Shown here: piece after piece, positions 216 through 63,712 of the stretch
Layout of the letters: each line of letters opens with the position of its first letter
Numbering within the stretch: position 1 is the first letter of the stretch
Origin: Malacoraja senta
Lineage: Eukaryota
NCBI GenBank assembly: GCA_038087875.1
Contig: CM075982.1
Coordinates: forward strand, 12,152,001-12,216,000
Direction of reading: 5' to 3'
DNA length: 64,000 bases
Program-made: the position numbers and the translations under genes
Notes under the pieces: model-generated
Database searches by the model: none
Seen by the model: only the letters and a program-made list of their open reading frames with translations
What the model was told of the DNA's origin: nothing

Positions 216-1370
216 TAATGTCATTTAGTTCAGGTTCCCGAAGTCTTTGCAAACAGGCTTTGTGCCTTAACATGTGTCACCATATGGTATATCCAAAGTT
301 TCATTTAAAGATCTGGAATAATGTGGAATAATAATAGAAAATACTTGAAATAGCAGGTAGGCAGGGCAATAGGGAAGTGGGAAGAGGGAGGGAGGGCGAA
401 TGGGCAGGATCATGCTTACATCATTTTTAAGTAATGGAAAAGTTAATTAAAAATGCACCTAATTAGTGATTAAAATAATTAAACAAAAGCAGCTGTTTTT
501 AAAGAAAGAAAATATCTGTTTTCTCTCATCATCCATTGACCTGTATTCCCCCTAGAATGAAAGGGTCTTAGATCCTGCAACAGATCTGACCTGATGTAGC
601 ATTTAACTGGTAAATTTCAAACATAGTAGGGAATTCTAACAAGACTGAGTTCCCATGCTGGAGGAAATTACCAAATCAATTTCAGACCAGATATGCATAA
701 GGTCATTAAAACGATTGAATGTTGGTCAACCTGCTTGGAACCACTGGCAAAATTTAGCAAGCTATGTCCATTATTTCAGATCAGAACTTACATCAGGATT
801 GTCCTTGACCACGATAGTTGACTCGGCTTCTCCTGGACAATATTGGTAGTTCAATACAATTGTGTGAATTTCTCAGTTTATGTACAGCTAAGTTTAGGGA
901 TACCCCTGCAAACACACAAGATCTGAGCTTATCATGTTATGTTAGCCATTTCCTGGCCATGCTGTGAGTTGAACATCTTTGGAGCAGCATCTTGTTTTCT
1001 GCCATGGATTCCTTTCTCCAATAACTTGGTACAGAATCCATGAGCTCTTTCTTGCATAGGGACAGTAGGCTTTGAGAAAGAGAAAGTTAAATTATTACCT
1101 ATTTAAATTATTTGTATTAATTGAATGCTTTTAGTTTATCTTGTTTATGATGTTGGGGAGGCCAACTCCATTAACTTCACCAGAAAAACAAATATGTTGT
1201 GCTACAGGTCTTCATTTAGTGCCAGTTATAATGCTTCACATAATATATGGAGTAGATTTTCACAAAATAACTCCAGTAATCCTCATTTAAAATTCAGATC
1301 AACTAAAATTGCTCGATTTGTAACACAATTAATAAATAATCCACCTCTTTGACTATTTGCGCATGCATAG

Positions 1371-1406
1371 CCACCTATGCAGCAGCCAAAGCTGCAAAAT
1401 ATGCAG
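1371..1406 (+). CDS. ELN: ELN cross-link exon ATYAAAKAAKYA (36 nt) with a rearranged acceptor
   Basis: catag|ccacctatgca...tatgcag|gtaagt. Frame preserved, but the acceptor lacks the polypyrimidine tract of the paralogous exon at 5421. Confidence 0.65.
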
Positions 1407-2141
1407 GTAAGTCTCCCTATTTTCAATAGAAAAATCTGAAAATGCTGGCAATTTAAAATTGAAATTTATAATACTGAACAATACTCAGCAGGCCCAACAG
1501 CTATGGAGAACAAACATAGGGTCTCAGGTCTCCAGTATATTATAACGCTTCTTACAGGAATCAACAAGGTTGTATTCAAAGGAATCCCACAATTGGTATT
1601 AAAATAATAAAGGACAAAATTGGGAAGTATTTTTTAATGTTCAGTTTAACCTATACCTCATTTTATTGTAAGTGGCAGTGGAAATTTGGAACATCATTCT
1701 CCCAAACTACTATGATTATCAATCAACTGAAAGTTAGTTAGATTTGTATGTTAAATTAATGAAATCAAATTTTGTGACAGGAAATGAGCTATAGATTAAG
1801 CTGAACACAGGCTTAAGGTGATGTTCTTAAGTTATCCTCTTCCTGTACTTGAATGCTGCCGTTGCTCACTAGTGTTGTTTATTTATGCCAGTTTAGAGCC
1901 ATGACCACATATACTGGCATTGTAGGATATTACAGAATAGTTCCAGTCGTACTGTCTATGGCTGAAATGCTTTTGAACGTTTGATCACAATCCACTTTCG
2001 CTTCTCACAGCAAACAAAAGCTGCCTTCCAAGCCTGGTAATAGATGACCCAATAACACTGCAGTCAATTGTCCATAGTCTATGAGTTTTTTAAATAATTT
2101 AATATACTAATGATTGGAATTCTACTCTATTGTCATTCCAG

Positions 2142-2249
2142 GGGCTGTGCCAGGAGGAGTTCCTGGTGGTGTACCTGGAGGCTATCCAGGGGGTGTACCT
2201 GGAGGCTATCCAGGGGGTGTACCTGGAGCTGCATTTGGAGGCCTTGCAG
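2142..2249 (+). CDS. ELN: ELN hydrophobic exon [36 protein letters not shown] (108 nt)
   Basis: cattccag|gggctgtg...cttgcag|gtgatc; VPGG/YPGG repeats. Confidence 0.93.
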
Positions 2250-2639
2250 GTGATCTTTTCTCTTTTAAAACCTTTTCATTTTTATTGAAATGTCTTGAGT
2301 GCTAAATTTCAGTTTTACCATCCATTCACGTTATATCAATATTACAATTTTTAAGTAGATCCTGAATCCTATGGCCATGACAGACACAAGACCAAAGAGG
2401 AAATGAATGTTCGAGGGGACATTTGATCTCTTATTTGTCTGGCTTTGGAACCAAGAAACCTGTGGTGCAAATAATCATAGGTAAAGGCTTAGAAAGGTTT
2501 TCATTGCCATTTTCAGGAAAAATTGCCCTTCAGCTTGGCATGCAAGAAGCTTATTCAATTTTCTTACCTCAAGTATTTCACTTGTGAAACTACATTGGTA
2601 TCAGGTGTCCTGGCCAAAACAATTTAAAGAAATTAGTAT

Positions 2640-2995
2640 GGGGCAGCACACCGGGGCAGCTGATAGAGGCGTTATCTCACAGCGCCAGATAACTGGGTTT
2701 GATCCAGACTTCGGGTGCTGCCTGTGTGGAGTTTACACGTTCTCCTTGTGACCGTGTGGGTTTCCTCCGGGTGCTCTGGTTTCCTCCCACATCCCAAGCG
2801 TGTATGGGTTTGTAGGATAAATGCCCTCTGAAAATTGCCCCTAGTGTGTAGGGAGTGGTTGCAAAAGTAGGATAATATTAAACTAGTGTGAACGGGTGAT
2901 TGACGGTCATTGTGGACTATGTGCCGAAAGGCCTGTTTGTCATGATGTATCTTTCAATCAATTAATTAATCAATCATTCAATCAATCAATCAATA
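2640..2995 (+). mobile_element. tRNA-derived SINE (V-SINE/HE1-like), copy B
   Basis: Degenerate A/B boxes (gggtttgatcc), gtgggtttcctccgggtgctctggtttcctcccaca core, (TCAA)n tail. Confidence 0.87.
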
Positions 2996-3840
2996 ATGTC
3001 ATTTAGTTTAGGTTCCTGAAGTCTTTGCAAACAGGCTTTATGTTTTAGTATGCCTTAACATGTGTCACCATATGGTATATCCAAAGTTCCATTTAAAGAT
3101 CTGGAATAATGTGGAATAATAATGGAAAATACTTGAAATACTCAGCAGGTAGGCAGGGCAATAGGGAAGTAGGAAGAGGGAGGGAGGGCGAATGGGCAGG
3201 ATCATGCTTTACATCATTTTTAAGTAATGGAAAAGTTGATCAAAAATGCACCTAAATAGTGCTTAAAAGCATTAAACTAAAGGAGCTGCTTTCAAAGAAA
3301 GAAAATATCTGTTTTCTCTCATAATCCATTAACCTATATTCCCCCTAGAATGAAAGGGTCTTAGATCCTGTAGCAGATCTGATCTGATGTAGCATTTAAC
3401 TGGTAAGTTTAAAAAATAGTCGGAAATTCTAACAAGACTGATCTCCCATGCAGGACTGAAATGACCGAATCAATTTCAGACCAGATATGCTAAGGTTATT
3501 AAAACGATTGAATGTTGGATTCAACCTGATTGGAAACACTGGCAAAATTTAGCAAGCTATGTCCATTATTTCAGATCAGAACTTACATCAGGATTGTCCT
3601 TGACCATGAAAGTTGACTCAGCTTCTCCTGGAAAATATTGGTAGTTCAATCCAAACTGTGTGCATGACTCAGTTTATATATAGCTAAGTTTAGGGATACC
3701 CCTGCAAACACATAAGTTCTGAGCTTACCTGATTATGTTAGCCATTTCCTGGCCATGCTTTGCAGTTGAACATCTTTGGAGCAGTACCTTGTTACGTGCC
3801 ATGTAATCCTTTCTCAGATAACCTGGGACAGAATCCATGA

Positions 3841-4060
3841 TACACAAAAGTGCTGGAGAAACTCAGCGGGTGCAGCAGCATCTATGGAGCGAAGGAAATA
3901 GGCAACATTTCGGGCCAAAACCCTTCATCAGTCTGAAGAAGGGTTTCGGCCCGAAACGTTGCCTATCTCCTTCGCTCCATAGATGCTGCTGCACCCGCTG
4001 AGTTTCTCCAGCACTTTTGTGTACCTTCGATTTTCCAGCATCTGCAGTTCCTTCTTAAAC
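3841..4060. mobile_element. Penelope-type fold-back insert (~90-bp arms) with a hammerhead core at 3933-3960
   Basis: Palindrome 3841-4023; 13-bp TSD acagaatccatga (3828-3840 / 4061-4073); empty site at 1031-1043. Confidence 0.85.
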
Positions 4061-4493
4061 ACAGAATCCATGAGCTCTTTCTTGCATAGGGACTATGGGC
4101 TTTGAGAAAGAGAAAGTTAAAGTATTACCTATTTAAATTATTTGCTTTATTTTAACGCTTTTAATTTATCTTGTTTATGATGTTGGTGAGGCCAACTCCA
4201 TTAACTTCACCAGAAAAACTAATATGTTGTGCTACAGGTCTTCATTTAGTGCCAGTTATAATGCTTCACAGAATATATGGAGTAGATTTTCAAGAAATAA
4301 CTCCAGTAATCCTCATTTAAAATTCAGATCAAATAAAATTGCACAATTTGAAACACAATAAAATAATTAATCCACCTCTTTGGCTATTTGCTCATGCTGC
4401 TCAATTCTTTATTATTTGGTATACAAAATATCAGTAATTCCCTGGCATTTACAAGAAGATAATTTACATGTAACTTATGATAATTAATGGGTA

Positions 4494-4705
4494 GGTAGAC
4501 GCAAAATGCTTGAGTAACTCAGTGGGACAGGCAGCAACACTGGAGGGAAGGAATGGGTGACGTTTCGGGACGAGACCCTTCTTCAGTCTTGAGTCGAAAC
4601 GTCACCCATTCCTTTCCACCAAAGATGCTGCCTGTCCCGCTGAATTACTCCAGCATTTTGTGTCTACCTTCGATTTAAACTAGCATCTGCAGTTCTTTCC
4701 TACAC
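4494..4705. mobile_element. Penelope-type fold-back insert, second subfamily
   Basis: Inverted arms; 14-bp TSD ataattaatgggta (4480-4493 / 4706-4719); empty site at ~10687-10700. Confidence 0.85.
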
Positions 4706-4783
4706 ATAATTAATGGGTAAATAGCTGTTTTATAGTATTTTTCTTAATTCGTAATATTTTAAAGTTTGATTTAATAGTGTTAA

Positions 4784-5083
4784 TAGCCCTGTCCCACGGT
4801 ACGAGTTCATTCCAAGAGAGGTAAGCACGGAAAGTGAACGTAGCGGGTACGTCGGAGCTCGGGGATGTCACTTAGTGGCTCCTAACGCTAACGGCAGGTA
4901 CTCGGGAAGACTCGCTAACGGCAGGTAAGTACGGGAAGACTCGTGAAGATTTTTCAACATGTTGAAAAATGTCCACGAGAGTCCCGAGTGCCGACGAGTG
5001 GCCATTACCGTAAATCTCCGAGTTCGAAGCAGGGCAAACTCGGGAGAGCTCATGGAATGAACTCGTACCGTGGGACAAGGCTA
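4784..5083. mobile_element. MITE (non-autonomous DNA transposon), ~300 bp, flanked by TTAA
   Basis: TIRs tagccctgtcccacggtacgagttcattcca / tggaatgaactcgtaccgtgggacaaggcta; ttaa at 4780-4783 and 5084-5087. Confidence 0.88.
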
Positions 5084-5420
5084 TTAATTGGAAAAGTATT
5101 ATGGTGATGTGATAGTAAATTACAAATTCAATCATAAGAAATTCCTATTATCCAAAACCATTGGTGATTTTATAAAATTAATTTGGAGGTTTTGGAAGAT
5201 TTTTTTATCATTATTAGCTGGAGACAGTGCAAAATGTCATGAGGCAGCAACTCCTTGTGATTTTGTGATGGTAGTGTAGTGGATTCAGCACCAATTCCTT
5301 AAATGTAATTGCAAATGCTTGTTTTGTGCTCCTCCAAGTTGAGCCTTTCAGAAATGTGATCTAATATATTATTTGCACAATATGAGGCTAAATTCTCTTA
5401 TCAATCTTTTTTCATTGCAG

Positions 5421-5456
5421 GTGGCTATGCAGCAGCCAAAGCTGCAAAATATGCGA
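5421..5456 (+). CDS. ELN: ELN cross-link exon GGYAAAKAAKYA (36 nt)
   Basis: ttttttcattgcag|gtggctat...tatgcga|gtaagt. Confidence 0.9.
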
Positions 5457-6182
5457 GTAAGTCTTCCTATTTTCAATAGAAAACACAGAAAATGCTGGTA
5501 ATTGAAAATTGAAATTTATAATACGGAACAATACTCAACAGGCCCAACAGCTATGGAGAACAAACGTAGGGTCTCAGATTTCCAGTATATTATAACGCTT
5601 CTTCCAGGAATCAACAAGTTTTTAGTCAAAGGAATCTACAATTAGTAGTAAAATAATTAAGGACAAAATTGGGAAGTCATTTTTAATGTTCAGTTTAATC
5701 TATACCTCGTTTTAATGTAAGTGGCAGTGGAGTGGTCAGTTGATTAATAATGATCAATCAACTGAAAGTTAGCACTAAGATTATTTGAGTTTTGTATATT
5801 AAATTAATGAAATCAAATTTTGTGACGGGAAATAAGCTATAGATTAAGCTGAACACAGGCTTGAGATGTGTTCTTAAGTTATCTTCCTGAACTTGAATTG
5901 TGCTGTTCCTCACTAGTGTTTTTTTATTTATGCCAGTTTAGCGTCATGAGCACATATACTGGCATTGTAGGATGTTGCAGAATAGTTCCAGTCGTTCTGT
6001 CTGTCTGAAATGCTTTTGAACGTTTGATCTCAATCCACTTTTAGTTCTCACAGTAAACAAAAGCTGCCTTTCAAGCCTGGTAATAGATGACCTAATAACA
6101 CTGCAGTAAATTGTCCATAGTCTGCGTCTTTTAAATAATTGAATATACTGATGATTGGAACTCTACTGTATTGTCATTCCAG

Positions 6183-6290
6183 GGGCTGTGCCAGGAGGAG
6201 TTCCTGGTGGTGTACCTGGAGGCTATCCAGGGGGTGTACCTGGAGGCTATCCAGGGGGTGTACCTGGAGCTGCATACGGAGGCCTTCCAG
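6183..6290 (+). CDS. ELN: ELN hydrophobic exon (R/G)[35 protein letters not shown] (108 nt)
   Basis: cattccag|...cttccag|gtgatc; only 3 nt differ from exon 2142-2249. Confidence 0.93.
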
Positions 6291-6666
6291 GTGATCTTTT
6301 CTCTTTTAAAACATTTTCATTTTTATTGAAATGTCTTGAGTGGTAAATTTCAATTTTACCATCCCTTCACTTTATATCAATATTACAATTTTAAGTAGAT
6401 CCTGAATCCTATGGCCAAGACACACACAAGACAAAGAGGAAATGAATGTGCTAGGGACATTTGATCTCTAATTAGTCTGGCTTTGGAACCAAGAAACCTG
6501 TGGTGCAAATAATCATGGGTACAGGCTTAGAAAGGTTTTCATTGCCATTTTCTGGAAAATTGCAAACTCCAGGAAGCACATTCAAATTTTTTTACTCAAG
6601 TATTTCACTTGTGAAACTACATTGATATCGGGTGTCATGGCCAAAACAATTTAAAGAAATTAATAT

Positions 6667-7005
6667 GGGGCGGCACACTGGCGCAGCTGATAGAGACGTT
6701 GTCTCACAGCGCCAGAGAACTGCGTTTGATCCTGATGTCGGGTGCTGCCCATGTGGAGTTTACGTGTCCTCCTTGTGACCGTGTGGGTTTCTTCTGGGTG
6801 CTCGGGTTTCCTCCCACATCCCAAGTGCCTGTGGGTTTGTAGGTTAAATGGCCTCTAAAAATTGCCCCTAGTGTGCAGGGAGTGGTTGCAAAAGTAGGAT
6901 AGCATAGAACTAGTGTGAACGGGTGATTGAAGGTCATTGTGGACTCTGTGTGCCGAAGTGCCTGTTTGCCATGATGTATCTTTCAATCAATCATTCAATC
7001 AATCA
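6667..7005 (+). mobile_element. tRNA-derived SINE, copy C
   Basis: Paralog of 2640-2995 with A box tggcgcagctg. Confidence 0.87.
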
Positions 7006-7089
7006 GTAATGTCATTTAGTTTAGGTTCCTGAAGTCTTTGCAACCGAGCTTTGTCTTTTCGTATGCTTTAACATGTGTCATCATATGGT

Positions 7090-8184
7090 TTTGGGGAAGG
7101 GTATTGACACGGATAGAGAACCGGTTGGCGGACAGGAAGCAGAGAGTAGGAATTCATGGGTCCTTTTCAAAATGGCAGGCAGTGACTAGTGGGGTGCCAC
7201 AAGGCTCGGTGCTGGGATGCCAGTTATTTACAATATATATTAACAATTTAGACGAGGGAATTAAATGTGAAATCTCCAAGTGTGTGGATGACACAAAGCT
7301 GGGTGGTAGTGTGAGCTGCGATGAGGATGCTATGAGGCTGCAGGGTGACTTGGATATGCTGGGTGAGTGGGCAGATGCATGACAGATGCAGTATAATGTG
7401 GATAAATGTGAGGTTATCCACTTTTATGGCAGATTATTATCTGAATGTCAGATTAGGAAAAGGGGAGGTGCAACGAGAGTGTGCTTGTACATCAGTCATT
7501 GAAAGTTAACATGCAGGTACAGCAGGCAGTGAAGAAAGCTAATGGCATGTTGGCCTTCATTGTGAGTGGATTTGAGTTTAGAAGCAAGGAGGTCCCACTG
7601 CAATTGTACAGGCCCTGGTGGGACGGTATCTGGAGTATTGGGTGCAATTTTGGTCTCCTAATTTGAGAAAGGACATCATTGCTATTGAGGGAGTGCAGCG
7701 TAGGTTCATCAGGTTAATTTCCGGGATGGTGGGACTGACCTATGATGAAAGAATGGGTCGACGGGGCTTGTGTTCACTGGAATTTAGAAGGATGAGAGGT
7801 GATCTTATTGAAACATATAAGATTATTAAGGGTTTGTCAAGCTAGATACAGGAAAAATATCCCCGATGTTGGGGAGTCCAGAACCAGGAGTCACAGTTTA
7901 AGAATAAGGTGTAGGCCATTTAGAACTGAGATGAGGAAACATTTTTTCTCCCAGATACTTGTGCATCTGTGGAATTCTCTGCCACAGAAGGTAGTGGAGG
8001 CTAATTCACTGGATGTTTTCAAGAGAGAGTTAGATTTATCTCTTAGGGCTAAAGGAATCAAGGGATCTGGGGAAAAGCAGGAATGAGGTACTGATTTTAG
8101 ACGATCAGCCATGATCATATTTAATAGCCATGCTGACTCGCAGGGCCAAATGGCCTACACCTGCACCTACTTTTCTTTGTTTCT
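7090..8184 (+). mobile_element. 5'-truncated CR1 LINE (RT C-terminal half plus 3'UTR), private to copy C
   Basis: VTSGVPQGSVLG, DDTKLGG, YWVQFWSP peptides; TSD atatggt (7083-7089 / 8185-8191); other copies have the empty catatggtatatcc site. Confidence 0.93.
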
Positions 8185-8734
8185 ATATGGTATATCCAAA
8201 GTTTCATTTAAAGATCTGGAATAATGTAGAATAATAATAGAAAATACTTCAAATACTCAGCAGGTAGGCAGAGCAATAGGGAAGTAGGAAGAGGGAGGGC
8301 TGGAAGACGAATGGGCAGGATCATACTGGACATCATTTTTAAGTAATGGAAAAGTTAATTAAAAATGCACCTAATTAGCGATTTAAAAATATGAAACTAA
8401 AGCAACTGTTTTCAAAGAAAGAAAATATCTGTTTTCTCTCATAATCCATTAACCTATATTCCCCCTAGAATAAGAGGGTCCTAGATCCTGCTGCAGATCT
8501 GACCTGATGTAGCATTTAACGGGTAAATTTCAAACATAGTAGGAAATTCTAACAAGACTGAGCTCCCATGCAGGAGTAAATGACCAAATCAATTTCAGAC
8601 CAGATGTGCATAAGGCCATTAAATATATTGAATGTTGGTCGACCTGATTGAAACCATTGGCAACATTTAGCAAGCTATGTCCATTATTTCAGGTCAACTT
8701 ACAGCAAGATTGGCCTTGACCAGAAGATTGACTC

Positions 8735-8862
8735 TGTGGAAGGGTCTCTACCCAAAACGTCACCAATTCCTTCACTCCATAGATGCTGCCTCACCTGCTG
8801 AGTTTCCCCAGCATTTATGTCTACCTTCAATTTGTCCAGCATCTGCTGTTCTTTCTTAAACA
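8735..8862 (+). mobile_element. Penelope-type short insert, single arm
   Basis: gaagggtctctacccaaaacgtcacc...gcatctgctgtt; TSD attgactc (8727-8734 / 8863-8870). Confidence 0.8.
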
Positions 8863-9082
8863 ATTGACTCAGCTTCTCCTGGAAAATATTGGTATTTTAA
8901 TCCAAACTGTGTATCGATTCAGTTTATGTATAGCTAAGTTTCCGTTCGCTCAGTAAACAAATGCTGCCTTTCAAGCCTGGTAAGAGTTGACCTGATAACA
9001 CTGCAGTAAGCTGTCCATAGTCTGAGTCTTTTAAATAATGTAATATATTGATGATTGGAATTCTGCTCTCTTGTCATTTCAG

Positions 9083-9154
9083 GTGCTGTGCCAGGAGGTG
9101 TACCTGGAGGCTATCCAGGGGGTGTACCTGGAGCTGCATATGGAGGGTTTCCAG
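9083..9154 (+). CDS. ELN: ELN hydrophobic exon [24 protein letters not shown] (72 nt)
   Basis: catttcag|gtgctgtg...tttccag|gtgatc; shorter paralog of the 108-nt exon. Confidence 0.92.
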
Positions 9155-9333
9155 GTGATCTTTTCTCTTTTAAAACCTTTTCGTTCTTATTGAAATGTCT
9201 TTAGTGCTAAATTTTGAGTTTTACCTTCCAATCACTTTATGCAAAAATTACAATTTTAAAGTAGACCCTGTTTTCCATAATGTACCAGTATCTTTCAATC
9301 AATCATTCAATCAATCAGTCATTTAGCTTAGGT

Positions 9334-9424
9334 ACACAAAAGTGCTGGAGAAACTCAGCGGGTGCAGCAGCATCTATGGAACGAAGGAGATAGGCAACGT
9401 TTCGGGCCGAAACCCTTCTTCAGA
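9334..9424 (-). mobile_element. Penelope-type short insert, single arm, intact hammerhead core on the minus strand
   Basis: Reverse complement reads gtCTGAAGAagggtttcggcccGAAAcgtt; TSD catttagctt(a/g)ggt (9320-9333 / 9425-9438). Confidence 0.85.
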
Positions 9425-10916
9425 CATTTAGCTTGGGTTCCTGAAGACTTTGAAAATAGGCTTTGTTGTTTTTGTATGCCTAAACATGTGTCCATATGGA
9501 ATATCCAAAGTTTCATTTAAAGATCTGGAATAATAATAGAAAATACTTGCAATACCTAGGAGGTAGGTAGGGCAATAGGGAAGTGGGAAGAGGGATGGAG
9601 GGCGAATGGGCAGGATCATGATTTACATCATTTTTAATTAATGGAAAAGTTAATTAAAAATGTACCTAATTAATGATTAAAAGCATTTAATTAATGCAGC
9701 TGTTTTCAACGAAAGAAAATATCGGTTTTCTCTCACAATCCATTAACCTATATTACCCATAGAATGAAATTGTCAAATCCTGCTGCAGATCTGACCTGAT
9801 GTAGCATTTAACTGGTAAATTTCAAACATAGTAGGAAATTCTAACAAGACTGAGCTCCCATGCAGGAGTGAATTTACCAAATCAATTTGAGACCAGGTGT
9901 GCATAAGGTTATTCAAACAATTAAATGTTGGTTTACCTGATCGGAACCACTTGCAAAATTTAGCAAGCTATGTCCATTATTTCAGGTCAGAACTTGCATC
10001 AGGATTGTTCTTGACCATGAAAGTTAACTCAGCTTTTCCTGGAAAATATTGGTATTTCAATCCAGACTGCGTGCATTACTCAATGTATATATAGCTAGGT
10101 TTAGGGATACCTCTGCAAACACATAGGTTCTGAGCTTACCAGGTTATGATGGTCATTTCCTGACCATGCTCTGCTGTTGAATATCTATGGAGCAGCATCT
10201 TGTTTTGTGCCAAGCAATTTTTTCTCAGATAACTTAGTGCAGAATCCATGAGCTCTTTCTTTGCAGGATCGTAGGCTTTGAGAAAGAGATAGTTAAATAT
10301 CTATTTTAATTATTTGTATTTATTTAATGCTTTTAGATTAAAATGGATTTGTGTGTTTTAGATTATCTTGTTTATGACATTGGTGAGGCCAACTCCATTA
10401 ACTTCACCAGAAAAACAAAATGATTGTGCCAGTTACAATGCTTCACAGAATATGTGCAGTAGATTTTCAAGAAAGAACTCCAGCAATCCTCATTTAAATT
10501 TCAGATGAAATAAAATTGCACGATCTGTATCACAATAAAATAAACGCTCCACCTCTTTGGCTATTTGCTCATGCTGCTCATTTTTTTAATTATTTGGTAT
10601 ACAAAAGATCAGTCTATTTGGTATACTAAAGATCAGTCTTTTTTACCCCTGGCAATCACAAGAAAATAATTTACATATGACCTAGGATAATTAACGGGTA
10701 AATAGCTGTTTTATAGTATTTTTCTTAATATCTTAAAGTTGGATACATTTTTGTGAGTTCGATTTAAACAACTTCGGTTAACATTGTATATTTCTGGTGT
10801 GTAGTTTTTCTGCAATGTAGTTGTGCTGTTGGCTTTCAAAACATTAGTCATCATTTGACTGTGTATGCAACTGATCGCTGTTCCATTATAACTTGTCCAT
10901 TCCTTTGATGTTGCAG

Positions 10917-10955
10917 GTGGTGCATACAGGTCTGCAAAAGCTGCTAAATATGGAG
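10917..10955 (+). CDS. ELN: ELN cross-link exon GGAYRSAKAAKYG (39 nt)
   Basis: gttgcag|gtggtgca...tatggag|gtacga. Confidence 0.9.
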
Positions 10956-12475: not shown

Positions 12476-12687
12476 GTAGGAAAGAACTGCAGATGTTGGT
12501 TTAAATTGAAGGTAGACACAAAATGCTGGAGTAACTCAGCGGGTCAGACAGCATCTCTGGAGAGCAGGAATGGGTGACGTTTCGGGTCGAGACCCTTCTT
12601 CAGTCTCGACCCGAAGCATCACCCATTCCTTCTCTCCAGAGATGCTGCCTGACCCGCCGAGTTACTCCAGCATTTTGTGTCTCCCTT
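12476..12687. mobile_element. Penelope-type fold-back insert
   Basis: Inverted arms; 15-bp TSD cactaagtaatctgt (12461-12475 / 12688-12702). Confidence 0.87.
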
Positions 12688-12866
12688 CACTAAGTAATCT
12701 GTTGAGTTAATGATACAATTCATTCTAGAGGATTAAAAGTAAGAGATGGGGTATGTGCCTCAAGCCTCGGTTGGAGTACTTTTTCAGTCATTGTGACAAA
12801 AATATTAAAGCGGCAACAAAGAGCACAAAAGAAAATACAAGCTTCACATGGCCTCTCCAACGTTGT

Positions 12867-15885: not shown

Positions 15886-17017
15886 GTAACTCTTTGTAAC
15901 CTTATGTATAGCATGAAACTATTACTATATAAGTAACCACGAAAATTGAATGTTACCAATCTTCATGGAAGGAAAAAAATGTGTCATAATAAAATTAACA
16001 TCAAGAATATATTTCAAATCTAGTTACAATCTTGTGGAACTTTTCAAAATATTGCAATCAACTCTTCCCAGTTCACAATATGATTAACAATATTATAGTG
16101 TCATGAACAGATTTACCAATCCTGAAGAAGGGGTCTAAACAAGGGTTCCGATCAGAAATGTCACCTATCCTTTTTCTCCAGAGATGCTGCTTTGCCAACT
16201 GAGTTACTCCAGCATTTGCGTCTATCTTTAATTTGACAGCATTGGGTTTGACTTTAGAAACTGCTTCCTAATTCAAGGTTATGGATCCATGAATCAACCC
16301 ATATTCATTACCAGAGTGCAGAGAGAATTTCACAAAGTGCTGGAGTAACTCAATGGGTCAGGCAGCATTAGTGGAGAGAATGATAGGCAGCATTTTTGAT
16401 TGGGATGCTTCTTCATACATTCAAGCATTCCTTGTATCTACGCAGATAATTTGTAATTCAAACACAACTTGTCTGGTCTTAACTGCAATGATTTTGTTCA
16501 AAAAGAAGCCAAGCGATATCTCACCATGTGATAAACAAGAAATGGAAATCCTTAATCATGGATATAGTCCAAGATAAAATAAAATCTTTAAAATCCAGTG
16601 GCTAAGTGCTTTTATATAAATATAAAAAAAAGATGCACAATTCAAATGTTTGCATAAACAGTAGAAGGGTCAGAAACTGCTTCATGTTCTTCTCTTCCTT
16701 GGTGATACTTATTGTGAATTATTTTATTCATGATATATTCACCAATTACTTTCTTGTCGTATTTGAATCTGGTATCAATTTTGATAGTTTTCTTTAAATG
16801 TTTGCTTACCCAACTTTTTATTTTTGCTGTATTACATCATTTCATTGGCGACCATTAATAATACTGAATAGACTTGCGGTAATTAAAATGTTATTTACAT
16901 GAAATCTTATTTTCAGGTATGTACAATTGACTTTTCATACAGACATATTGGTGAATAATAAGACCTTTAAGTACATTTTGTTTAGATTCTAATCTATTAG
17001 TTAATACAAGCATCCTT

Positions 17018-21416: not shown

Positions 21417-22657
21417 GTATTGTGATGTGTCATCAACAAGTTTAACTTCATTGTGATAAATTTAATGAAATATGCAGATATTATTCCCATGATTTTGCAA
21501 TTCAGTCCATCAATAAATTCATTCTCTGCCATTGTTCATTTTGTATCAAGCAACTATTAAAATACAAGTGTGGCTTGACTCTGCTCTTAGGGCTTTATTT
21601 AATACAAAGACATAATGTAGTCATGTCCCCTGTAGGAGACTTGAATCCTCTAACTGCCCAGCTAAGCACAAGCAAACTATTGTGTTATTTAATGATGGGA
21701 GGTATTGATAGGATAGGCAATCAGAACCCTTTTCACATGGTGGAAATGTCAGAGACAGGAGCACATAGATTTAACGTGAGAGGAGCAGAGTTTAAAGGAT
21801 GCAGGTATTGGGGGCCAAAGGGCTTGTTCCTTTGCTGTACGATTTTATGTTATCCCCATACATACTATAGCTGTCTTGTTTGCTATTATTTTGCTTCTCA
21901 ATCTTACTTCAAGAAAGTAAAGTATTAATTTCCTCTACTGAGTTGGATGCCTTGTTGCTATTATTAATTCAGTAAATTTGTGCAACCATTTTCAGGAACT
22001 ATTACTTCATTTATAAGGAAATGTCCAAAAGGGAACGCAATTATCCAGATGAGGCCAAACTAATAGATTTTGCACAATTATCACTTTGTTTTAAATTTAT
22101 CCTCTCATATTAAGCTATCTGAAAATAAAAAAATTGCAGATGTTGCAAATATGAAGTAAAAAAAAAAGAGAAAATGCTTGGTCAATTCAACCAGAAACAT
22201 CTGTTTCTCTTTCCACAGATATTGCCTGATCTACTGAGTGTTTTCACTGTTTCTGTTTTCTGTTTCTGCATTCTTGATAACAGTCAATTTTAAATAGCTG
22301 CAGGCTTAAAGTTCAGTGCATGTAAAAGCATGAGATTGATATTACAGTGGGATGCTAAAACCACTTTGCACTTGGGTCACTGAAAGATTGTTTCACTTTT
22401 CCAATTTAGCCCAGCATCTAGACCAGGTCTGGAGTTTCTGGGGAGAGAGAGTGGGCAGCTGTCATAGGCCAAAAGATGGGTTTTGGCTCGGGCATCTGAA
22501 GAGAGTGGGAATGAGAAAATAATTTAAAACATTATTAATGGCAAGAAATAAGAAACAAAGCATGGCATTCTTGAACAGAATGAACAAGCACATGTATAGT
22601 AATGGGATTCTAACATTGTTAGAATAAAGTTTAATTACTTGTCCATCCTTTGATCCG

Positions 22658-22696
22658 GGGCTGGAGCTGCTGGGGCTAAAGCTGCAAAATTTGCAG
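22658..22696 (+). pseudogene. ELN: ELN cross-link exon GAGAAGAKAAKFA with a mutated acceptor (CG instead of AG); either a pseudo-exon or spliced from a cryptic GAG at 22664-22666
   Basis: acttgtccatcctttgatccg|gggctgga...tttgcag|gtaaat; sits in the expected cross-link slot between two hydrophobic exons. Confidence 0.7.
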
Positions 22697-23197
22697 GTAA
22701 ATCTATTTCTGAATTTTCTACATCATACTATCACATTCTTTTTAAGTTCCTAATAGTTCTTTTTATTCTTAGACACAACACAAGACATTAAAACACAATG
22801 AACTTTTGTTTATTAAGCTCCTGGAAAAAGGAGCTAAAAGTGCAGCAAATCAAAACAGAGATGTGAATTAAAGGGTCCTGGATGTGACTATGTTGTTTAA
22901 GTCATAACATATGCCAGACCCATTATTCATTGCTCCACTTTGTGTCATCTCTTTGTCCCCTATATGTTTCTGTATCTCTGTAAAATGCTGTGTCTTCCAG
23001 ACTGATCATTTCAGAGGCTTCAATCAAGCTATTAGACTACATTGGGATCTGGGGACATGCCTGGACATTTCAGTGTTCCTCCTCTTCACGTGTACAAACC
23101 CATTCAGCAGAAAGTCAATAATACATTGCTGTTTTTACATAGGTAGCAACCTATAAACAAAGGGCGGCACGGTGGCGCAGCGGCAGAGTTACTGCCC

Positions 23198-33533: not shown

Positions 33534-33632
33534 ATCAGTCTGAAGAAGTGTTTCGGCCCGAAACGTTGCCTATTTCCTTCCCTCCATAGATGCTGCTGCA
33601 CCCGCTGAGTTTCTCCAGCATTTTTGTGTACC
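33534..33632 (+). mobile_element. Penelope-type short insert, single arm
   Basis: agtCTGAAGAagtgtttcggcccGAAAcgtt; 13-bp TSD taatgattaacct (33521-33533 / 33633-33645). Confidence 0.85.
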
Positions 33633-34171
33633 TAATGATTAACCTTCAGGATTAAATATATTACACTATTGGCAAAACTGGATACCAAGCAACATTTTTT
33701 TTATTGGACATCCCATAAGGGTACATCAATCAGTGTGTTTATGTCAATTCTATTTATAAAGATGGTTTGGATTCAATCTTCCAGATTTTGCCATGTAAAC
33801 AAATGGCAGCAGCCCCCACTGTTATATTTATATCAACAGATAGAATGTCAGAATGGGTCTGGTTCTGATGGTCGGACTGATGTAAGTGTAAGGGGGTGAT
33901 GTTATTGTTGCAATGGCACGGGCACACAGGGCTTAGCTTAGAATTTTATGGCTTTATATGGAAATTTATGTCAATTTCATTGTTGTAGCCTTTTGAATTA
34001 ATTTGTTAGCTGTTCAATGACAAAACAAAATCTATCCAAATAAAGCTTGCAACAGGTTTGCAAAGTTGTCTCGACTTTATTTCTCTAATGCTTTGATAAA
34101 ATAACTGAAAAAGCACAAACATATATCTAAAAAAATGTTAAGCATGAGTTACTATTTATTGGATTGAACAG

Positions 34172-37330: not shown

Positions 37331-37496
37331 ATGGTGACGTTTCGGGTCGAGGCTCTTCTTCAGACTCTGAAGAAGGGTCTCAACCCGAAACGTCACCCAT
37401 TCCTTCTCTCCAGAGATGCTGCCTGTCCCGCTGAGTTACTCCAGCATTTTGTGTCTACCTTCAATTTAAACTAGCATCTGCAGTTCTTTCCTACAC
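37331..37496. mobile_element. Penelope-type insert with a short inverted 5' arm; hammerhead core on both strands
   Basis: ggtgacgtttcgggtcgaggctcttcttcag|act|CTGAAGAagggtctcaacccGAAAcgtcacc. Confidence 0.85.
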
Positions 37497-37524
37497 ATAA
37501 TAAATTCTTATCACTGCATTGTAG

Positions 37525-39417: not shown

Positions 39418-40784
39418 TATAGAAACATAGAAAATAGGTGCAGGAGTAGGCCATTCGGCCCTTCGAGCCTGCACCGCCATTCAATATGATCATGGCTGAT
39501 CATCCAACTCAGTATCCTGTACCTGTCTTCTCTCCATACCCCCTGATACCTTCAGCCACAAAGGCCACATCTAATTCCCTCTTAAATATAGCCAATGAAC
39601 TGACCTCAACTACCTTCTATGGCAGAGAATTCCACAGATTCACCACTCTCTTGTGAAAAATGTTTTTCTCATCTCGGTCCAAAAAGATTTCCCCCTTATC
39701 CTTAAACTGTGACCCCTTGTTCTGGACTTCCCCAACATCGGGAACAATCTTCCTGCATCTAGCCTGTCCAACCCCGTAAGAATTTTGTAAGTTTCTATAA
39801 GATCCCCCCTCAATCTTCTAAATTCTAGCGAGTACAAGCCAAGTCTATCCAGTCTTTCTTCATATGAAAGTCCTGACATCCCAGGAATCAGTCTGGTGAA
39901 CCTTCTCTGTACTCCCTCTACGGCAAGAATGTCTTTCCTCAGATTAGGAGACCAAAACTGTACGCAATACTCCAGGTGTGGTCTCACAAAGACCCTGTAC
40001 AACTGTAGTAGAACCTCCCTGCTCCTATACTCAAATCCTTTTGCTATGAATGCTAACATACCATTCGCTTTCTTCACTGCCTGCTGCACCTGCATGCCTA
40101 CTTTCAATGACTGGTGTACCATGACACCCAGGTCTCGTTGCATCTCCCCTTTTCCTAATCGGCCACCATTCAGATAATAGTCTACTTTCCTGTTCTTGCC
40201 ACCAAAGTGGATAACCTCACATTTATCCACATTATACTGCATCTGCCATAAATTTGCCCACTCACCCAGCCTATCCAAGTCACCTTGCAGCCTCCTAGCA
40301 TCCTCCTCACAGCTAACACTGCCCCCCAGCTTCGTGTCATCCGCAAATTTGGAGATGTTGCATTCAATTCCCTCGTCCAAATCATTAATATATATTGTAA
40401 ATAGCTGGGGTCCCAGCACTGAGCCTTGTGGTACCCCACTAGTTACTGCCTGCCATTCTGAAAAGGACCCATTTACTCCTACTCTTTGCTTCCTGTCTGC
40501 CAGCCAGTTCTCTATCCACATCAATACTGAACCCCCAATACCGTGTGCTTTAAGTTTGTATACTAATCTCTTATGTGGGACCTTGTCAAAAGCCTTCTGA
40601 AAGTCCAGATATAACACATCCACTGGTTCTCCTTTATCCACTCTACTAGTTACATCCTCGAAAAATTCTATAAGATTTGTCAGACATGATTTCCCTTTCA
40701 TAAATCCATGCTGACTTTGTCCAATGATTTCACCACTTTCCAAATGTGCTGCTATCCCATCTTTAATAACTGACTCTAGCAGTT
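39418..40784 (-). mobile_element. Young 5'-truncated CR1 LINE with an uninterrupted RT frame
   Basis: 398-aa ORF: QHGFMKGKSCLTNL, YLDFQKAFDKVPH, GVPQGSVLGP, FADDTK; ctatgtttct-type tail. Confidence 0.96.
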
Positions 40785-41189
40785 GACCCTGCCCTATAAT
40801 GCGGCAGTGGAATGTCATATTCAGGGAAAGGCCCAATTTGTGGAAGGGGAAACCACTATTAAAGACTACAATGTGAATAAAAATGAAAAAAAATAGCTTT
40901 TTGAGAAATCTTCAGCTGAATACTCCTTTGTGCTTGTTAAGAGTGGACATAACTGCTGATCAGTAAGCAAAAACCAGAGCCTCTTGACATCAAAAGGATC
41001 CCTATCCATTTCAAATAGCCTAACCACCTGAAACATTGGGCCTTGGTAAACATTTGGTTCCAAAGCAGCAATGGATAATAGGTCATTAAAAGTTATTTTT
41101 TGGATGCTACTTCAAATTTTAAGAGAAAATTCGACCTTTACAAGAATTTACTCCCTTAAATGATATTACTCTTTGTTTTTTATGAACAG

Positions 41190-48425: not shown

Positions 48426-48902
48426 GGATAAGTCATGACTATCTCTCCTGGTTGTGGATTCTCAAGCCAGAAGAGGTTTCCCAGCATCCCTCATTGAATC
48501 CTTTATGTCTTGAGATTGTTTGTCATATTTCTAAATGTTAGTGATTTTGACTCAAATGCCCTTCATTGGACAACTCTCTCATTCCCAGGAATTAAGAAGT
48601 GATTATAGCTACATATGTTAGTGACATAAAACCACAACAAATCACTCTGATCAAGTGATTATAACGATACATGTTAAAGTGGCACGGAACCAACAAATCA
48701 CTCTGATCACAACTACTTCTACCTGACACACGTGACAAATGTCAGACACTCCCATAATATTAAAGATATTCAGTATCTTATTTGATAAAACCTTTTCCAA
48801 TTTAATTCTATCAAATGTTTAATAACAGCTGTTTTCTATAGGTGTTGGCTAAGCTAGAAATAATTTTGTCACCAATTGAATCTATTTTCTGTGTTTCTGA
48901 AG

Positions 48903-48949
48903 GCTCCCCTTGTGCAATGGGCAAATACTGTGGCAGAAGGAGAAAATAA
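48903..48949 (+). CDS. ELN: ELN terminal coding exon GSPCAMGKYCGRRRK*
   Basis: tttctgaag|gctcccct...agaaaataa; two Cys plus a basic tail, typical of the tropoelastin C-terminus. Confidence 0.96.
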
Positions 48950-50700
48950 CCAACTATTGGGAAAAGAAGTGACCTCAAGAATTCTGGTGCTACTGCCTGA
49001 TTTGGAATGTAAAGGATGGTGTGTAATGGAACTCCTCAGCTCCATCCCTTTCCCTCAGATACACCTTTCAACCCCCATTTCATCTACATGTGTTATCAAT
49101 ATCTAATGGATTTTTTTTTATCAAGGAAACTCTGTAATATGTTGTGTGCTTCAAGAGTTTAGGGACCAGTTTACAGCTGAGTCTTTTGCTGTTAATCTCA
49201 GTATTAGTTAACACCATCCTTGACTTGATTTGTTTTTATTTTGTGACAATGTCTCCAGTATTTTTAAATTATAAAAATGGTGTTATTAATTTTCAGTTGC
49301 TTGGGCTTTGCTTTACAAAATGTACTGTGAGCGATGCCTGGATTATATAGCTGGGTAGTAGCTCCATCCACCCCTACCATAATATTTGGTGCTAAAAATC
49401 ATTTTTTGAGAGTGGCAGCTGTATTCATACAAATGATGGCTCAACTGATGCTGGGACCTGAAGTGACCAATGCAACTTTCACATATTATAGTTATACGTG
49501 TTTGTGCACATGGCTGCCAAGACTTTGCACATGGAGGCCAAATTACCTTCCTGGCCAGAATATTCCTGGAAAGATTGATTTGATAATTTTTTTAGTTTAT
49601 TTTAAGTTTATGCAAGCTGAGAGACATTAGGACAGATTTTCCTTGTCTTCCACTCAAGGCTTCTGATGTTCATATGCACAGAAAACAAGTGCCAGCTATC
49701 TTACAGGTGTGTGTATCTCCCCGTCTGATTTTCCTGTATCCATTGCACATACATGACTCAATAGCCCTAGGTTCAGGAAAATCTGCCCCAGAGTAATAAA
49801 ACATGAATTACTTCACCATAGGCATGGTGTGGCCAGACGTTTACTACCTCCAGGATTAGGATTGTTGAATGAGCTCCATACGTTTCAACAATCCGATTAC
49901 CTCCACAGCTAGTTTTAACTAAGATTTTTATATTATTGATGTCCTCTTAGAATTCTTCCAACTGAGTTAATTGCATAACATGTATCCAGGTTACTTTTAT
50001 TTTGAATTTGAATAATTTCCCTAATCCCTTCCAGTTTATAAAGTTTCCCTGGATTAGAAATACACCTTAATTGTCTTGCTGTTAAAAGATCACTGTACAT
50101 GGTGTTGTGAATCCCTGTGGCACTACATTGTATCTTGGGCATCATCTTTGTAAGCAACTATTTAAAAATGAGAGGTTATTTGAACAGAATCATGCACAAT
50201 TATTGAATTGCGTGCAAATTCAAGCTGTCTGACTTGTGAAAATGCAGAAGCCCACCAAAGCCACACTTTATACCTTCCAGTTTCTGATCCTTTCCTCTGG
50301 TTCCACTTTCTTGGACTCTATTTTTCTGTTTTAACTGTTTCTGGTGGAAATTATGATTTTCAATTTTCTTGAAAATAGTGCGGAGAGCAACTTGATATGA
50401 GCACCTTAAGTGTTAATAGAGGCAAATGCTGAACAGTTTCTACTTTTATTGCAACTCACCACTTTGTCCTGCAACTCTTTTAATAAATGAGATTGCTTGA
50501 AATTATGCTGTCATATGTAATACTTTACATCAGTTCTGTTGTAATAAACATTGTAGCAGAACTTGAGCCCCAACATTAATGTATTGCTTCAGATTTGGTG
50601 TCATGACCATCCGCTGTATCTTCGTAAACTCTGACTCAAATACAGGATGGATAATAATTCAGTACTTGCTTTTAAAATAAACAAAATTGTTTACTTTAAT
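48950..50700 (+). promoter_or_regulatory. ELN: ELN 3'UTR with miR-29 8mer sites (48985-48992, 49387-49394) and candidate polyA signals (49795, 50482, 50543, 50676)
   Basis: TGGTGCTA twice, GAATGTA at 49005-49011, several AATAAA; no recognisable transposon up to ~51100; exact 3' end not determinable. Confidence 0.7.
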
Positions 50701-62493: not shown

Positions 62494-63712
62494 ATAATAA
62501 TAATAATATCTTTTATTGTCATTGCACAGAGGTACGAGATTTGGTGTGCAGCTTCCATCCGATGTAATAACTAAAAATTTAGACACCCAGAGAAACAAGA
62601 TTTAAAATAAAATAAAACGGTATAAAGTGCAAATAAAATAGGTCTGTGCCGGGTTGATGTGCGACATGACCATCCGAGGAAGACAGTTCATGGGGGGGGG
62701 GGGGGGGGCACTCAGCAGGGCCGGTTCAGAGCAGTTATAGCTCTGGGGATGAAGCTGTTCCTAAGTCTGGAGGTGCACACGTAGAAGGCCTTGTAACGTC
62801 TGCCGGAAGGTAGAAGTTCGAACAGCAAGGGTGTGAGGAGTCATTGTGAATGCTGACGGCCTTCCTGAGGCACCGTGTATTGTAAATGCCCTCCAAGGCT
62901 GGTAGCTGTGTTCCAATTATCTTCTGTGCTCTGTGGACGGCCCGCTGAAGAGCTCTCCTCTCCGCCTCCACACAGCTGAGATACCACACAGAGATGCCAT
63001 ATGTTAGGATGCTCTCTGTGGGGCAGCGGTAGAAGGTTGTCAGCGGCTGTTGGGGCAGACCAGTGTTCTCAGGAAGAACAGTCGTTGCTGTGCCTTCTTG
63101 ACCAGTTGGTGGACCATGTGTGTGCCCAGAAACCTAAAGCTGGACACTCTCTCCACACTGTCCCCGTTGATAAAGATTGGAGCGTATTCCCCATTATGTG
63201 TCCTTCAGAAGTTGATAATCAGCTCCTTGGTCTTAGAGGTGTTTAGGGACAGGTTGTTATCTGAGCACCAGTCCGCCGGGTTCTGCACCTCTGCTCTGTA
63301 GTGTGTATCATCACCGTTGGTGATCAGCCCGATCACCGTTGTGTCGTCTACAAACTTGACAATGGTGTTGGTGTTGAATGTAGGAACACAGTCATGTGTG
63401 AAGAGGGAGTAGAGCATGGGGCTCAGTACACAGCCCTGTGGTGTGCCGGTGCTCAGGGTGATAGTGGAGGACAGATGCGGGCCCAGTCTCGCTGCCTGCG
63501 GTTGCTCCGTCAGGAAATTCAGGATCCAGTCGCATATCGGCGAGCTGAGGCCTAGCTGGTGGAGTTTGGTGGTGAGCTTGGTGGGGATGAACGTGTTGAA
63601 GGCAGAGCTGTAGTCTATGAAAAGCATCCTCACGTACGTGCCCTGTCTTTCCAGGTGAGTCAGGACAGTGTGAAGAGCCAGAGAGATGGCATCCTCTGTG
63701 GATCTATTTGCC
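62494..63712 (-). mobile_element. Rex1/Babar-type LINE, 5'-truncated
   Basis: [47 protein letters not shown]; (TTA)n tail. Confidence 0.92.

What the first reader, a model, noticed from the sequence alone, without database searches (positions are those of the whole stretch)
1345..1410. Deletion plus templated micro-inversion destroys a splice acceptor and rebuilds one in frame
Seen: in copy A the intron matches copy B up to ctatttgc.catgc (1353-1366 vs ~4384-4397), then jumps to the cross-link exon, skipping ~1 kb of copy-B sequence including the native acceptor. The junction tgcatagccacct (1364-1376) is the exact reverse complement of aggtggctatgca, the native acceptor/exon start (5419-5431). 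The inverted patch places a new TAG exactly 36 nt before the donor. The exon keeps its length and frame, with GGY changed to ATY. Inference: this is a replication template-switch event (FoSTeS/MMBIR-like) that could rescue the exon.
Basis: partly seen in the sequence, partly recalled or inferred. Interest (0 to 1): 0.75.

Follow-up and report, generated by a model that had tools for sequence, protein, structure and literature searches.

The report
Templated deletion scar at elastin exon
One duplicated cross-link exon of a shark-type elastin gene lost its upstream intron and splice acceptor in a deletion patched with 8 inverted bases copied from the exon's own start, a real but ordinary repair or replication scar, with no sign that the exon is still spliced in.

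Summary
The window holds a tropoelastin gene on the + strand, with two tandem copies of a cross-link plus hydrophobic exon pair. In copy A, 1027 nt of copy B (4398-5424) are replaced by 8 nt (1367-1374, ATAGCCAC). These 8 nt are the exact reverse complement of the first 8 nt of the native exon. With 3 nt and 2 nt of microhomology the inverted match is 13 nt. A chance match so close to a breakpoint has P of about 0.0015. A third, older copy (C) keeps the intron and the native cag|GTGG acceptor, so A is the derived state. A contig from a different organism appears to span the junction, which argues against an assembly error. The mutational reading (templated insertion at a deletion junction) is well supported, and this is a known class. 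The "rescue" reading is not supported. The AG stays in register only because the native AG-GTGG-CT is self-complementary. The new acceptor has 9 of 17 pyrimidines, like random AGs here, against 11-14 for real acceptors. It also lies in a 7-bp hairpin made by the event. RNA-like contigs displayed only native-type junctions. Skipping the exon also keeps the frame. This scan had already noted the exon-pair duplication on this same window.

The parts
1031..1366 (+). Copy A intron, left flank of the junction; homologous to B 4061-4397 and C 10240-10566
   Evidence: blastn at 92.9% identity; alignment to copy C at 74%
1367..1374 (+). 8 nt new in copy A (ATAGCCAC), the reverse complement of the native exon start GTGGCTAT
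   Evidence: left unaligned between the two blastn blocks
1364..1376 (+). 13-nt inverted copy of B 5419-5431, including TGC and CT microhomology
1364..1381 (+). Perfect hairpin created by the event: TGCATAG / loop CCAC / CTATGCA; it holds the TAG
   Evidence: local 26-nt fold -10.4 kcal/mol, z -3.8
1371..1406 (+). Copy A KA cross-link exon remnant (would read ATYAAAKAAKYA); other in-frame AGs end at 1382 and 1385
1407..1412 (+). Intact consensus donor GTAAGT of the copy A exon
2142..2249 (+). Copy A hydrophobic exon ([18 protein letters not shown]...)
   Evidence: high exon-restricted depth in X23
4398..5424 (+). Copy B sequence with no counterpart in A: intron, two transposon insertions, native polypyrimidine tract, acceptor, and the first 4 exon nt
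4484..4705 (.). Palindromic MITE-like insertion in copy B, absent from copy C, flanked by a duplicated ataattaatgggta
4780..5087 (.). Second palindromic element in the copy B intron, absent from copy C
5419..5431 (+). Native acceptor AG plus exon start in copy B; stands in for the template of the inverted patch
5421..5456 (+). Copy B KA exon with its native acceptor (ttttttcattgcag|GTGG)
10240..10916 (+). Copy C intron (outgroup): continues past the A breakpoint exactly as B does
10917..10955 (+). Copy C KA exon with native gttgcag|GTGG acceptor

Best explanation
This is a fixed germline rearrangement scar in one unit of a tandemly duplicated exon pair of tropoelastin.

The event: about 0.5-1.0 kb of intron was lost, together with the native polypyrimidine tract, the acceptor and the first 4 nt of a 36-nt KA cross-link exon. 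The gap was bridged by a short stretch copied in inverted orientation from the exon start. The simplest path is as follows. A 3' end finishing in ...CATGC paired through TGC with GCA on the same-sense strand at the exon start. It copied back through ATAGCCACCT. It then re-paired through CT and carried on along the normal template into ATGCAGCAGCC.... Two microhomology-guided template switches of this kind fit either replicative switching (FoSTeS/MMBIR) or foldback/alt-EJ repair of a break.

The consequence: an AG remains exactly 36 nt before the donor only because the native AG-GTGG-CT is its own reverse complement at both ends. The event also made a perfect 7-bp hairpin that contains this AG.

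The likely outcome: with no polypyrimidine tract, the exon is most likely skipped or included only at a low level. All elastin exons here are phase 1-1 cassettes, so skipping, use of the TAG, and use of the CAGs 12 or 15 nt further in all keep the reading frame.

Shown: the anatomy, the polarity, and the weak acceptor context. Inferred: a single event, the enzyme pathway, and the splicing outcome.
For: - Junction anatomy and uniqueness. P = 0.0015 for a chance 8-mer match within 15 nt of a breakpoint.
- Polarity: copy C (10240-10955) reads ...ctttggctatttgctcatgc|tgctcatttt... past the A breakpoint and keeps gttgcag|GTGG. All seven other KA-type exons examined start at a normal AG, except the one at 22667.
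- Independent reads: in X8, a different organism, contig record 28 spans 1331-1542 with 9 mismatches and no gaps.
- Gene identity: alternating AAAKAAKY and GVPGG exons bounded by AG/GT, and a C-terminal ...CAMGKYCGRRRK* near 48.9 kb.
- Weak acceptor: 9 of 17 pyrimidines at -20..-4, against 11-14 in 15 real acceptors of this gene. The mean is 8.2 for 2338 other AGs, and 45% of those reach 9 or more.
- Hairpin: -10.4 kcal/mol, and none of 200 shuffles folded as well.
- RNA-like run X23 (exon depth 900-7500, intron depth 0-9): the loose ends displayed show ...GGAGGCCTTCCAG|GTGG joined at 1375, and hydrophobic exon joined to GCTATGCAGCAGCC. Both are native-type. No loose end at 1371 was displayed.
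- Known precedents for such junctions: abstracts of PMC8421209, PMC11724301 and PMC7954356.
Against: - A single event is not proven. An in-place template switch followed by a separate TGC-mediated deletion gives the same sequence.
- The splicing verdict rests on indirect evidence. X23 is from another organism (B), and its DNA was not shown to carry the A-type junction. Contigs drop rare isoforms, and the tables were truncated (45 loose ends not shown).
- TAG acceptors are used natively by two other exons of this gene (15850 and 25173).
- The donor of exon A is a perfect CAG|GTAAGT, and its 32 retained exon bases carry no lineage-specific change.
- An A-specific G>A at 1352 makes a branch-point-like TTGAC 18 nt before the TAG.
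- In the window's own species (X1) no contig covering 1290-1369 in the A form was displayed.
- For X8 record 28, the positions of the 9 mismatches were not displayed, so the patch itself is not verified letter by letter there.
Confidence: 0.65

Rival explanations
1. One reading: the templated patch rebuilt a working acceptor, and the exon is still spliced at 1370/1371, giving an elastin with an ATYAAAKAAKYA cross-link domain.
For: - TAG lies exactly 36 nt before an intact consensus donor.
- TAG acceptors are native at exons 15850 and 25173.
- There is no other AG between 1297 and 1368.
- A TTGAC branch-point-like motif lies 18 nt upstream, created by an A-specific substitution.
- The exon body is undecayed.
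- The junction appears to be shared with another organism, so it is old, yet the donor is still perfect.
Against: - Pyrimidine content is 9 of 17, the same as random AGs and below all 15 real acceptors.
- The AG is sequestered in a stem of -10.4 kcal/mol.
- No A-type spliced contig was displayed in the RNA-like run.
- The undecayed 32 nt are not significant. About 1.7 neutral changes are expected, so P(0) is about 0.18 (my estimate from the 11% A/B divergence).
Confidence: 0.18
2. The exon is kept in shortened form through the in-frame CAG acceptors inside it (exon starting at 1383 or 1386, giving AAKAAKYA or AKAAKYA).
For: - Both CAGs lie a multiple of 3 from the donor.
- CAG is preferred over TAG.
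- 1383-1385 lies just outside the 7-bp hairpin stem.
Against: - The same poor pyrimidine context, 9 of 17.
- The same AGs exist in copy B, and nothing indicates they are used there.
- No supporting contig.
Confidence: 0.1
3. Two unrelated events: first a short in-place template switch or inversion at the acceptor, which would have kept the pyrimidine tract and a TAG, and later a TGC-microhomology deletion of the upstream intron.
For: The sequence is equally compatible. The left junction has only 3 nt of microhomology, and the 13-mer would fit in place of native 5414-5426 (from the sequence).
Against: It needs two independent rare events that share exactly one boundary. No intermediate form is seen in copies B or C, or in the contigs laid.
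Confidence: 0.15
4. Chance resemblance or assembly artefact: the 8 filler bases are untemplated, or the junction is a mis-join.
For: Only 8 nt are independent evidence. No contig of the window's own species was displayed across 1290-1369 in the A form.
Against: - P is about 0.0015-0.01 for a chance match.
- A contig from another organism spans 1331-1542 without gaps at 96% identity.
- The flanks on both sides are clean paralogous sequence.
Confidence: 0.04

Closest known systems
MMBIR/FoSTeS templated insertions at rearrangement junctions (PMC8421209, abstract)
   Same: Polymerase template switching at microhomology produces a short templated insertion at a junction. Here there are 3-nt and 2-nt microhomologies, and the template overlaps the breakpoint.
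   Different: This case is small, simple and fixed in a fish germline. There is no copy-number gain and no chain of several switches. A replicative origin cannot be told from break repair.
Foldback-templated inverted insertions at double-strand breaks (PMC11724301, abstract); Pol-theta end joining with templated inserts (my own knowledge, not checked here)
   Same: Very short (5-34 bp) inverted duplications next to the break, primed by microhomology, with the other end captured by end joining. The result is a deletion plus an inverted filler.
   Different: The 4-nt loop (CCAC) is itself inverted relative to the ancestor. The copy therefore ran on the same-sense strand of the right flank, rather than being a simple self-foldback of the 3' tail. 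The enzymes involved are unknown.
Short-range template-switch mutations that create or perfect hairpins (PMC7954356, abstract)
   Same: A stretch is replaced by the reverse complement of adjacent sequence, which turns a 2-bp inverted repeat (AG..CT) into a perfect 7-bp stem.
   Different: Those events are usually length-neutral clusters of substitutions. Here the switch is coupled to loss of 0.5-1 kb.
Evolutionary loss of cassette exons in tropoelastin, for example the primate loss of exons 34 and 35 (my own knowledge, not checked here)
   Same: Elastin exons are in-frame cassettes, so a single cross-link exon can be lost without breaking the protein.
   Different: Here the exon body and donor remain, and only the acceptor side is gone. 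Loss from the mRNA is inferred, not shown.

Membership tests
Templated-insertion deletion junction (template switch: MMBIR/FoSTeS or foldback/alt-EJ) | Filler at the junction is an exact copy, here inverted, of nearby sequence | tested here: met
   1367-1374 is the reverse complement of B 5421-5428. The match is 13 nt with the overlaps. Chance P = 0.0015 within 15 nt.
Templated-insertion deletion junction (template switch: MMBIR/FoSTeS or foldback/alt-EJ) | Microhomology at each switch point | tested here: met
   TGC on the left (1364-1366 = B 4395-4397 and the reverse complement of 5429-5431). CT on the right (1375-1376 = B 5425-5426 and the reverse complement of 5419-5420).
Templated-insertion deletion junction (template switch: MMBIR/FoSTeS or foldback/alt-EJ) | The rearranged state is derived relative to an outgroup | tested here: met
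   Paralogous copies B and C both keep the intron past the breakpoint and the native cag|GTGG.
Templated-insertion deletion junction (template switch: MMBIR/FoSTeS or foldback/alt-EJ) | Deletion and insertion arose in one event | not testable with these tools
Templated-insertion deletion junction (template switch: MMBIR/FoSTeS or foldback/alt-EJ) | The junction is real in reads, not an assembly product | tested here: inconclusive
   X8 contig 28 spans 1331-1542 with 9 mismatches and no gaps, but it comes from another organism and the mismatch positions were not displayed. No A-form contig was displayed for the window's own species.
Functional (rebuilt) 3' splice site | AG in frame with the donor | tested here: met
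   TAG ends at 1370 and the exon is 36 nt. The CAGs ending at 1382 and 1385 are also in frame.
Functional (rebuilt) 3' splice site | Polypyrimidine tract upstream of the AG | tested here: not met
   9 of 17 pyrimidines, against 11-14 in 15 real acceptors. 45% of 2338 non-acceptor AGs do as well.
Functional (rebuilt) 3' splice site | Branch point 18-40 nt upstream | tested here: inconclusive
   TTGAC with its A at 1352, 18 nt before the AG. This is a motif match only.
Functional (rebuilt) 3' splice site | AG accessible, not buried in stable structure | tested here: not met
   The AG lies in a 7-bp stem. The local fold is -10.4 kcal/mol, z -3.8, and none of 200 shuffles folded as well.
Functional (rebuilt) 3' splice site | Spliced reads that use it | tested here: inconclusive
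   RNA-like contigs of X23 displayed only native GTGG-type junctions. They come from another organism, they are contigs, and the tables were truncated.
Tropoelastin gene | Alternating KA cross-link and hydrophobic GVPG-type exons, all phase 1-1, with a C-terminal Cys pair and basic tail | tested here: met
   Exon scan, KA exons, and ...CAMGKYCGRRRK* near 48.9 kb. These match the features described in PMC12733013.

The most novel reading that the evidence does not exclude
The template-switch patch did preserve a working acceptor, at the TAG or at the in-frame CAGs just inside the exon, helped by the A-specific branch-point-like change at 1352. The exon has then stayed in the mRNA since before two species split. 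That would be a natural case where one complex mutation both destroys a splice site and replaces it in register.
Probability: 0.2. Interest if true: 0.5.

Novelty: new member of a known kind. Interest (0 to 1): 0.25.

Why it matters
It is a clean, polarised natural example of a deletion with an inverted templated filler and microhomology at both switches, and the ancestral state is preserved next door in paralogous copies. That is useful as an illustration of the mutational class.

It also shows how modular, in-frame elastin exons tolerate damage to a splice site. This bears on how the repeat array of cross-link and hydrophobic domains gains and loses units.

It does not open a new question. 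The mutational class is well described, and the exon's fate is a routine RNA-seq check.

Tried and rejected
A stretch with a known long repeat is against the stated rule of read laying, so only copy A (250-2640) was laid.
2. All runs were available only as assembler contigs. The single RNA-like run belongs to another organism, so absence of the A-type junction could not be established.
3. A protein search with the hydrophobic exon, meant to fish out transcript-derived fragments carrying the upstream KA exon, gave nothing. The first query was too short. The corrected 41-aa query had 63 candidates and none was significant.
4. A position weight matrix built from the gene's own 15 acceptors is dominated by paralogy among them (shared tcaatc...tcattgcag). 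Its very low score for the new TAG (-26.9, 13th percentile of decoys) is not a fair general measure. I rely on pyrimidine counts instead. MaxEntScan tables were not available offline.
5. A synteny check for LIMK1 downstream found only LINE reverse-transcriptase fragments among the long ORFs. Gene identity was settled by the C-terminal exon instead.
6. A constraint test on the 32 retained exon bases has too little power. Zero A-lineage changes against about 1.7 expected gives P of about 0.18.

Full report
**What the locus is.** The + strand of the window carries a tropoelastin gene.
- Short exons bounded by AG and GT alternate between KA cross-link peptides (GGYAAAKAAKYA and relatives) and hydrophobic GVPGG/GYPGG peptides. 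All lengths are multiples of three, read in phase 1.
- The gene ends with the typical ...CAMGKYCGRRRK* exon near 48.9 kb.
- These are the features given for jawed-fish tropoelastins in PMC12733013.
I confirm this. Unit A (1-2673) and unit B (2777-6700) are 88-93% identical. An older unit C lies at about 8939-10955.

**The observation.**
- blastn aligns A 1031-1366 to B 4061-4397, and A 1375-2673 to B 5425-6700.
- Between the two blocks, A has 8 nt (1367-1374, ATAGCCAC) where B has 1027 nt (4398-5424).
- The 8 nt are the exact reverse complement of B 5421-5428 (GTGGCTAT), the first eight bases of the native exon.
- The TGC before the patch and the CT after it fit both the flank and the inverted copy.
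- Allowing one mismatch, these are the only two occurrences of that 13-mer in 64 kb.
- A random 8-mer of local composition matches either strand within 15 nt of either breakpoint with P = 0.0015. Within 50 nt, P = 0.010.
- The exon remnant 1371-1406 is 36 nt, preceded by TAG and followed by GTAAGT. It would read ATYAAAKAAKYA.

**Polarity.**
- Copy C reads ...cctctttggctatttgctcatgc|tgctcattttt..., continuing past the A breakpoint just as B does. About 350 nt later it reaches gttgcag|GTGG.
- B and C agree against A, so A carries the derived deletion and patch.
- B's extra sequence includes two palindromic transposon-like inserts (about 4484-4705, with a duplicated ataattaatgggta at its ends, and 4780-5087). 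C lacks both.
- A third member of the first family (3832-4072) is in B but not in A, so insertions after the duplication are plausible.
- The deletion was therefore between about 0.5 and 1.0 kb.

**Is it real DNA?**
- Only assembler contigs were available.
- Run X1 matches the window at 99-100% in many pieces, so it is the same species. No A-form contig was displayed for 1290-1369. The tool warns that holes prove nothing.
- Run X8, from a different organism (4-9% divergence in other pieces), has a 223-nt contig laid on 1331-1542 with 9 mismatches and no gaps. It bridges the junction with 36 and 168 letters on the two sides.
- A B-type contig cannot do this. Such contigs appear instead as loose ends at 1366 (TGCTCAATTC...) and at 1375 (...TTGCAGGTGG).
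- The junction thus appears to exist outside this assembly, and probably predates a species split.
- The positions of the 9 mismatches were not displayed, so this is good evidence rather than letter-by-letter proof.

**Mechanism of the mutation.**
- The minimal path has two microhomology-guided switches. A 3' end ...CATGC pairs through TGC with GCA on the same-sense strand at 5429-5431. It copies back to 5419, making ATAGCCACCT. It then re-pairs through CT and continues on the normal template from 5427.
- This is the footprint described for MMBIR-type templated insertions (PMC8421209), and for short inverted templated insertions at double-strand breaks made by foldback plus end joining (PMC11724301). 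It is also related to short-range template switches (PMC7954356).
- From sequence alone, replication and break repair cannot be separated.
- One complex event also cannot be separated from an in-place switch followed by a TGC-mediated deletion. I prefer one event because both changes share one boundary.
- The event turned a 2-bp inverted repeat (AG..CT around GTGG) into a perfect 7-bp stem: TGCATAG, loop CCAC, CTATGCA.

**Why the AG is in register.** The native AG-GTGG-CT is self-complementary at its ends. Inverting it gives AG-CCAC-CT, with the AG in the same place. So "a new TAG exactly 36 nt before the donor" follows from the geometry. It is not evidence of selection or repair of function.

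**Is the acceptor usable?**

Against:
- Positions -20 to -4 hold 9 pyrimidines of 17. The 15 acceptors of this gene that I could place hold 11-14.
- The 2338 other AGs of the gene region average 8.2, and 45% of them reach 9. The context is that of a random AG.
- The AG sits in the stem of the new hairpin. The local 26-nt fold is -10.4 kcal/mol and none of 200 shuffles folded as well. The 81-nt context folds at -23.7 kcal/mol (z -3.0), against -13.5 kcal/mol (z +0.5) for copy B.

For:
- TAG itself is used by two native exons (15850 and 25173).
- No competing AG lies in the 70 nt upstream.
- The donor is a perfect CAG|GTAAGT.
- An A-specific G>A at 1352 makes TTGAC 18 nt before the AG.

Skipping the 36-nt exon is in frame as well, so the gene does not depend on any rescue.

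**RNA evidence.**
- Run X23 is labelled uncertain, but it behaves as RNA. Its depth is 900-7500 on the exons and 0-9 on the introns.
- Its contigs displayed a hydrophobic-exon end joined to GTGG+CTATGCAGC (loose end at 1375: GGAGGCCTTCCAGGTGG).
- They also displayed the KA exon joined to GGGCTGTGCCAGG, and hydrophobic exons joined to GCTATGCAGCAGCC and to the copy C exon.
- All of these junctions are native-type. No loose end at 1371 and no CCACCTAT-type junction was displayed.
- Three things weaken this: the run is from another organism, contigs drop minor forms, and 45 loose ends were not listed. It counts as "not seen", not as "absent".

**Verdict.**
- The event is real and well explained, and it belongs to a known mutational class.
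- The claim that it rebuilt a working splice site is unsupported and on balance unlikely. I give about 0.2 for the TAG and about 0.3 for any of the three in-frame AGs.
- It is a tidy textbook-style example rather than a discovery.

Noticed in passing
window 22640-22700: Another KA exon (22667-22696, AAGAKAAKFA) lacks an AG at the position homologous to the native acceptor (...cctttgatccgggg|CTGG). The first AG lies 6 nt further in and is in frame. This may be a second acceptor shift, or a dying exon, in the same gene.
   Followed up: partly
window 48850-48960: The tropoelastin C-terminal exon ...SPCAMGKYCGRRRK* marks the 3' end of the gene. It lies immediately before the stretch that another note of this scan (s1-141461) reads as a miR-29-targeted 3' UTR.
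   Followed up: partly
window 3832-4072, 4484-4705, 12480-12690, 8734-8862, 9329-9423, 16135-16415, 33537-33660, 37333-37505: A family of about 200-nt palindromic (hairpin) MITE-like elements is scattered through the elastin introns. Some are specific to one duplicate unit, so they were inserted after the duplication. A different palindromic element lies at 4780-5087.
   Followed up: partly
window 5453-5458: Copy B's KA exon ends GCGA|gtaagt where copy A and the RNA contigs have GCAG|gtaagt. This changes the junction codon from Gly (GGG) to Arg (AGG) and slightly weakens the donor. The intact copy therefore carries its own derived change.
   Followed up: no
window 1352: An A-specific G>A (B and C both have G) creates cttTGAC, a branch-point-like motif 18 nt before the surviving TAG. 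It could be chance.
   Followed up: no
window 39640-40836 (-) and 63205-63633 (-): LINE-type reverse-transcriptase ORF fragments (Pfam RVT_1, E = 1e-27 and 8e-17) lie downstream of the last hydrophobic exon block.
   Followed up: no
window 2246: All four runs laid read C where the window has G at 2246 (GGCCTTGCAG against GGCCTTCCAG). Copy B also has C. The contigs laid there are probably from paralogous copies, or G is private to this copy or individual.
   Followed up: no
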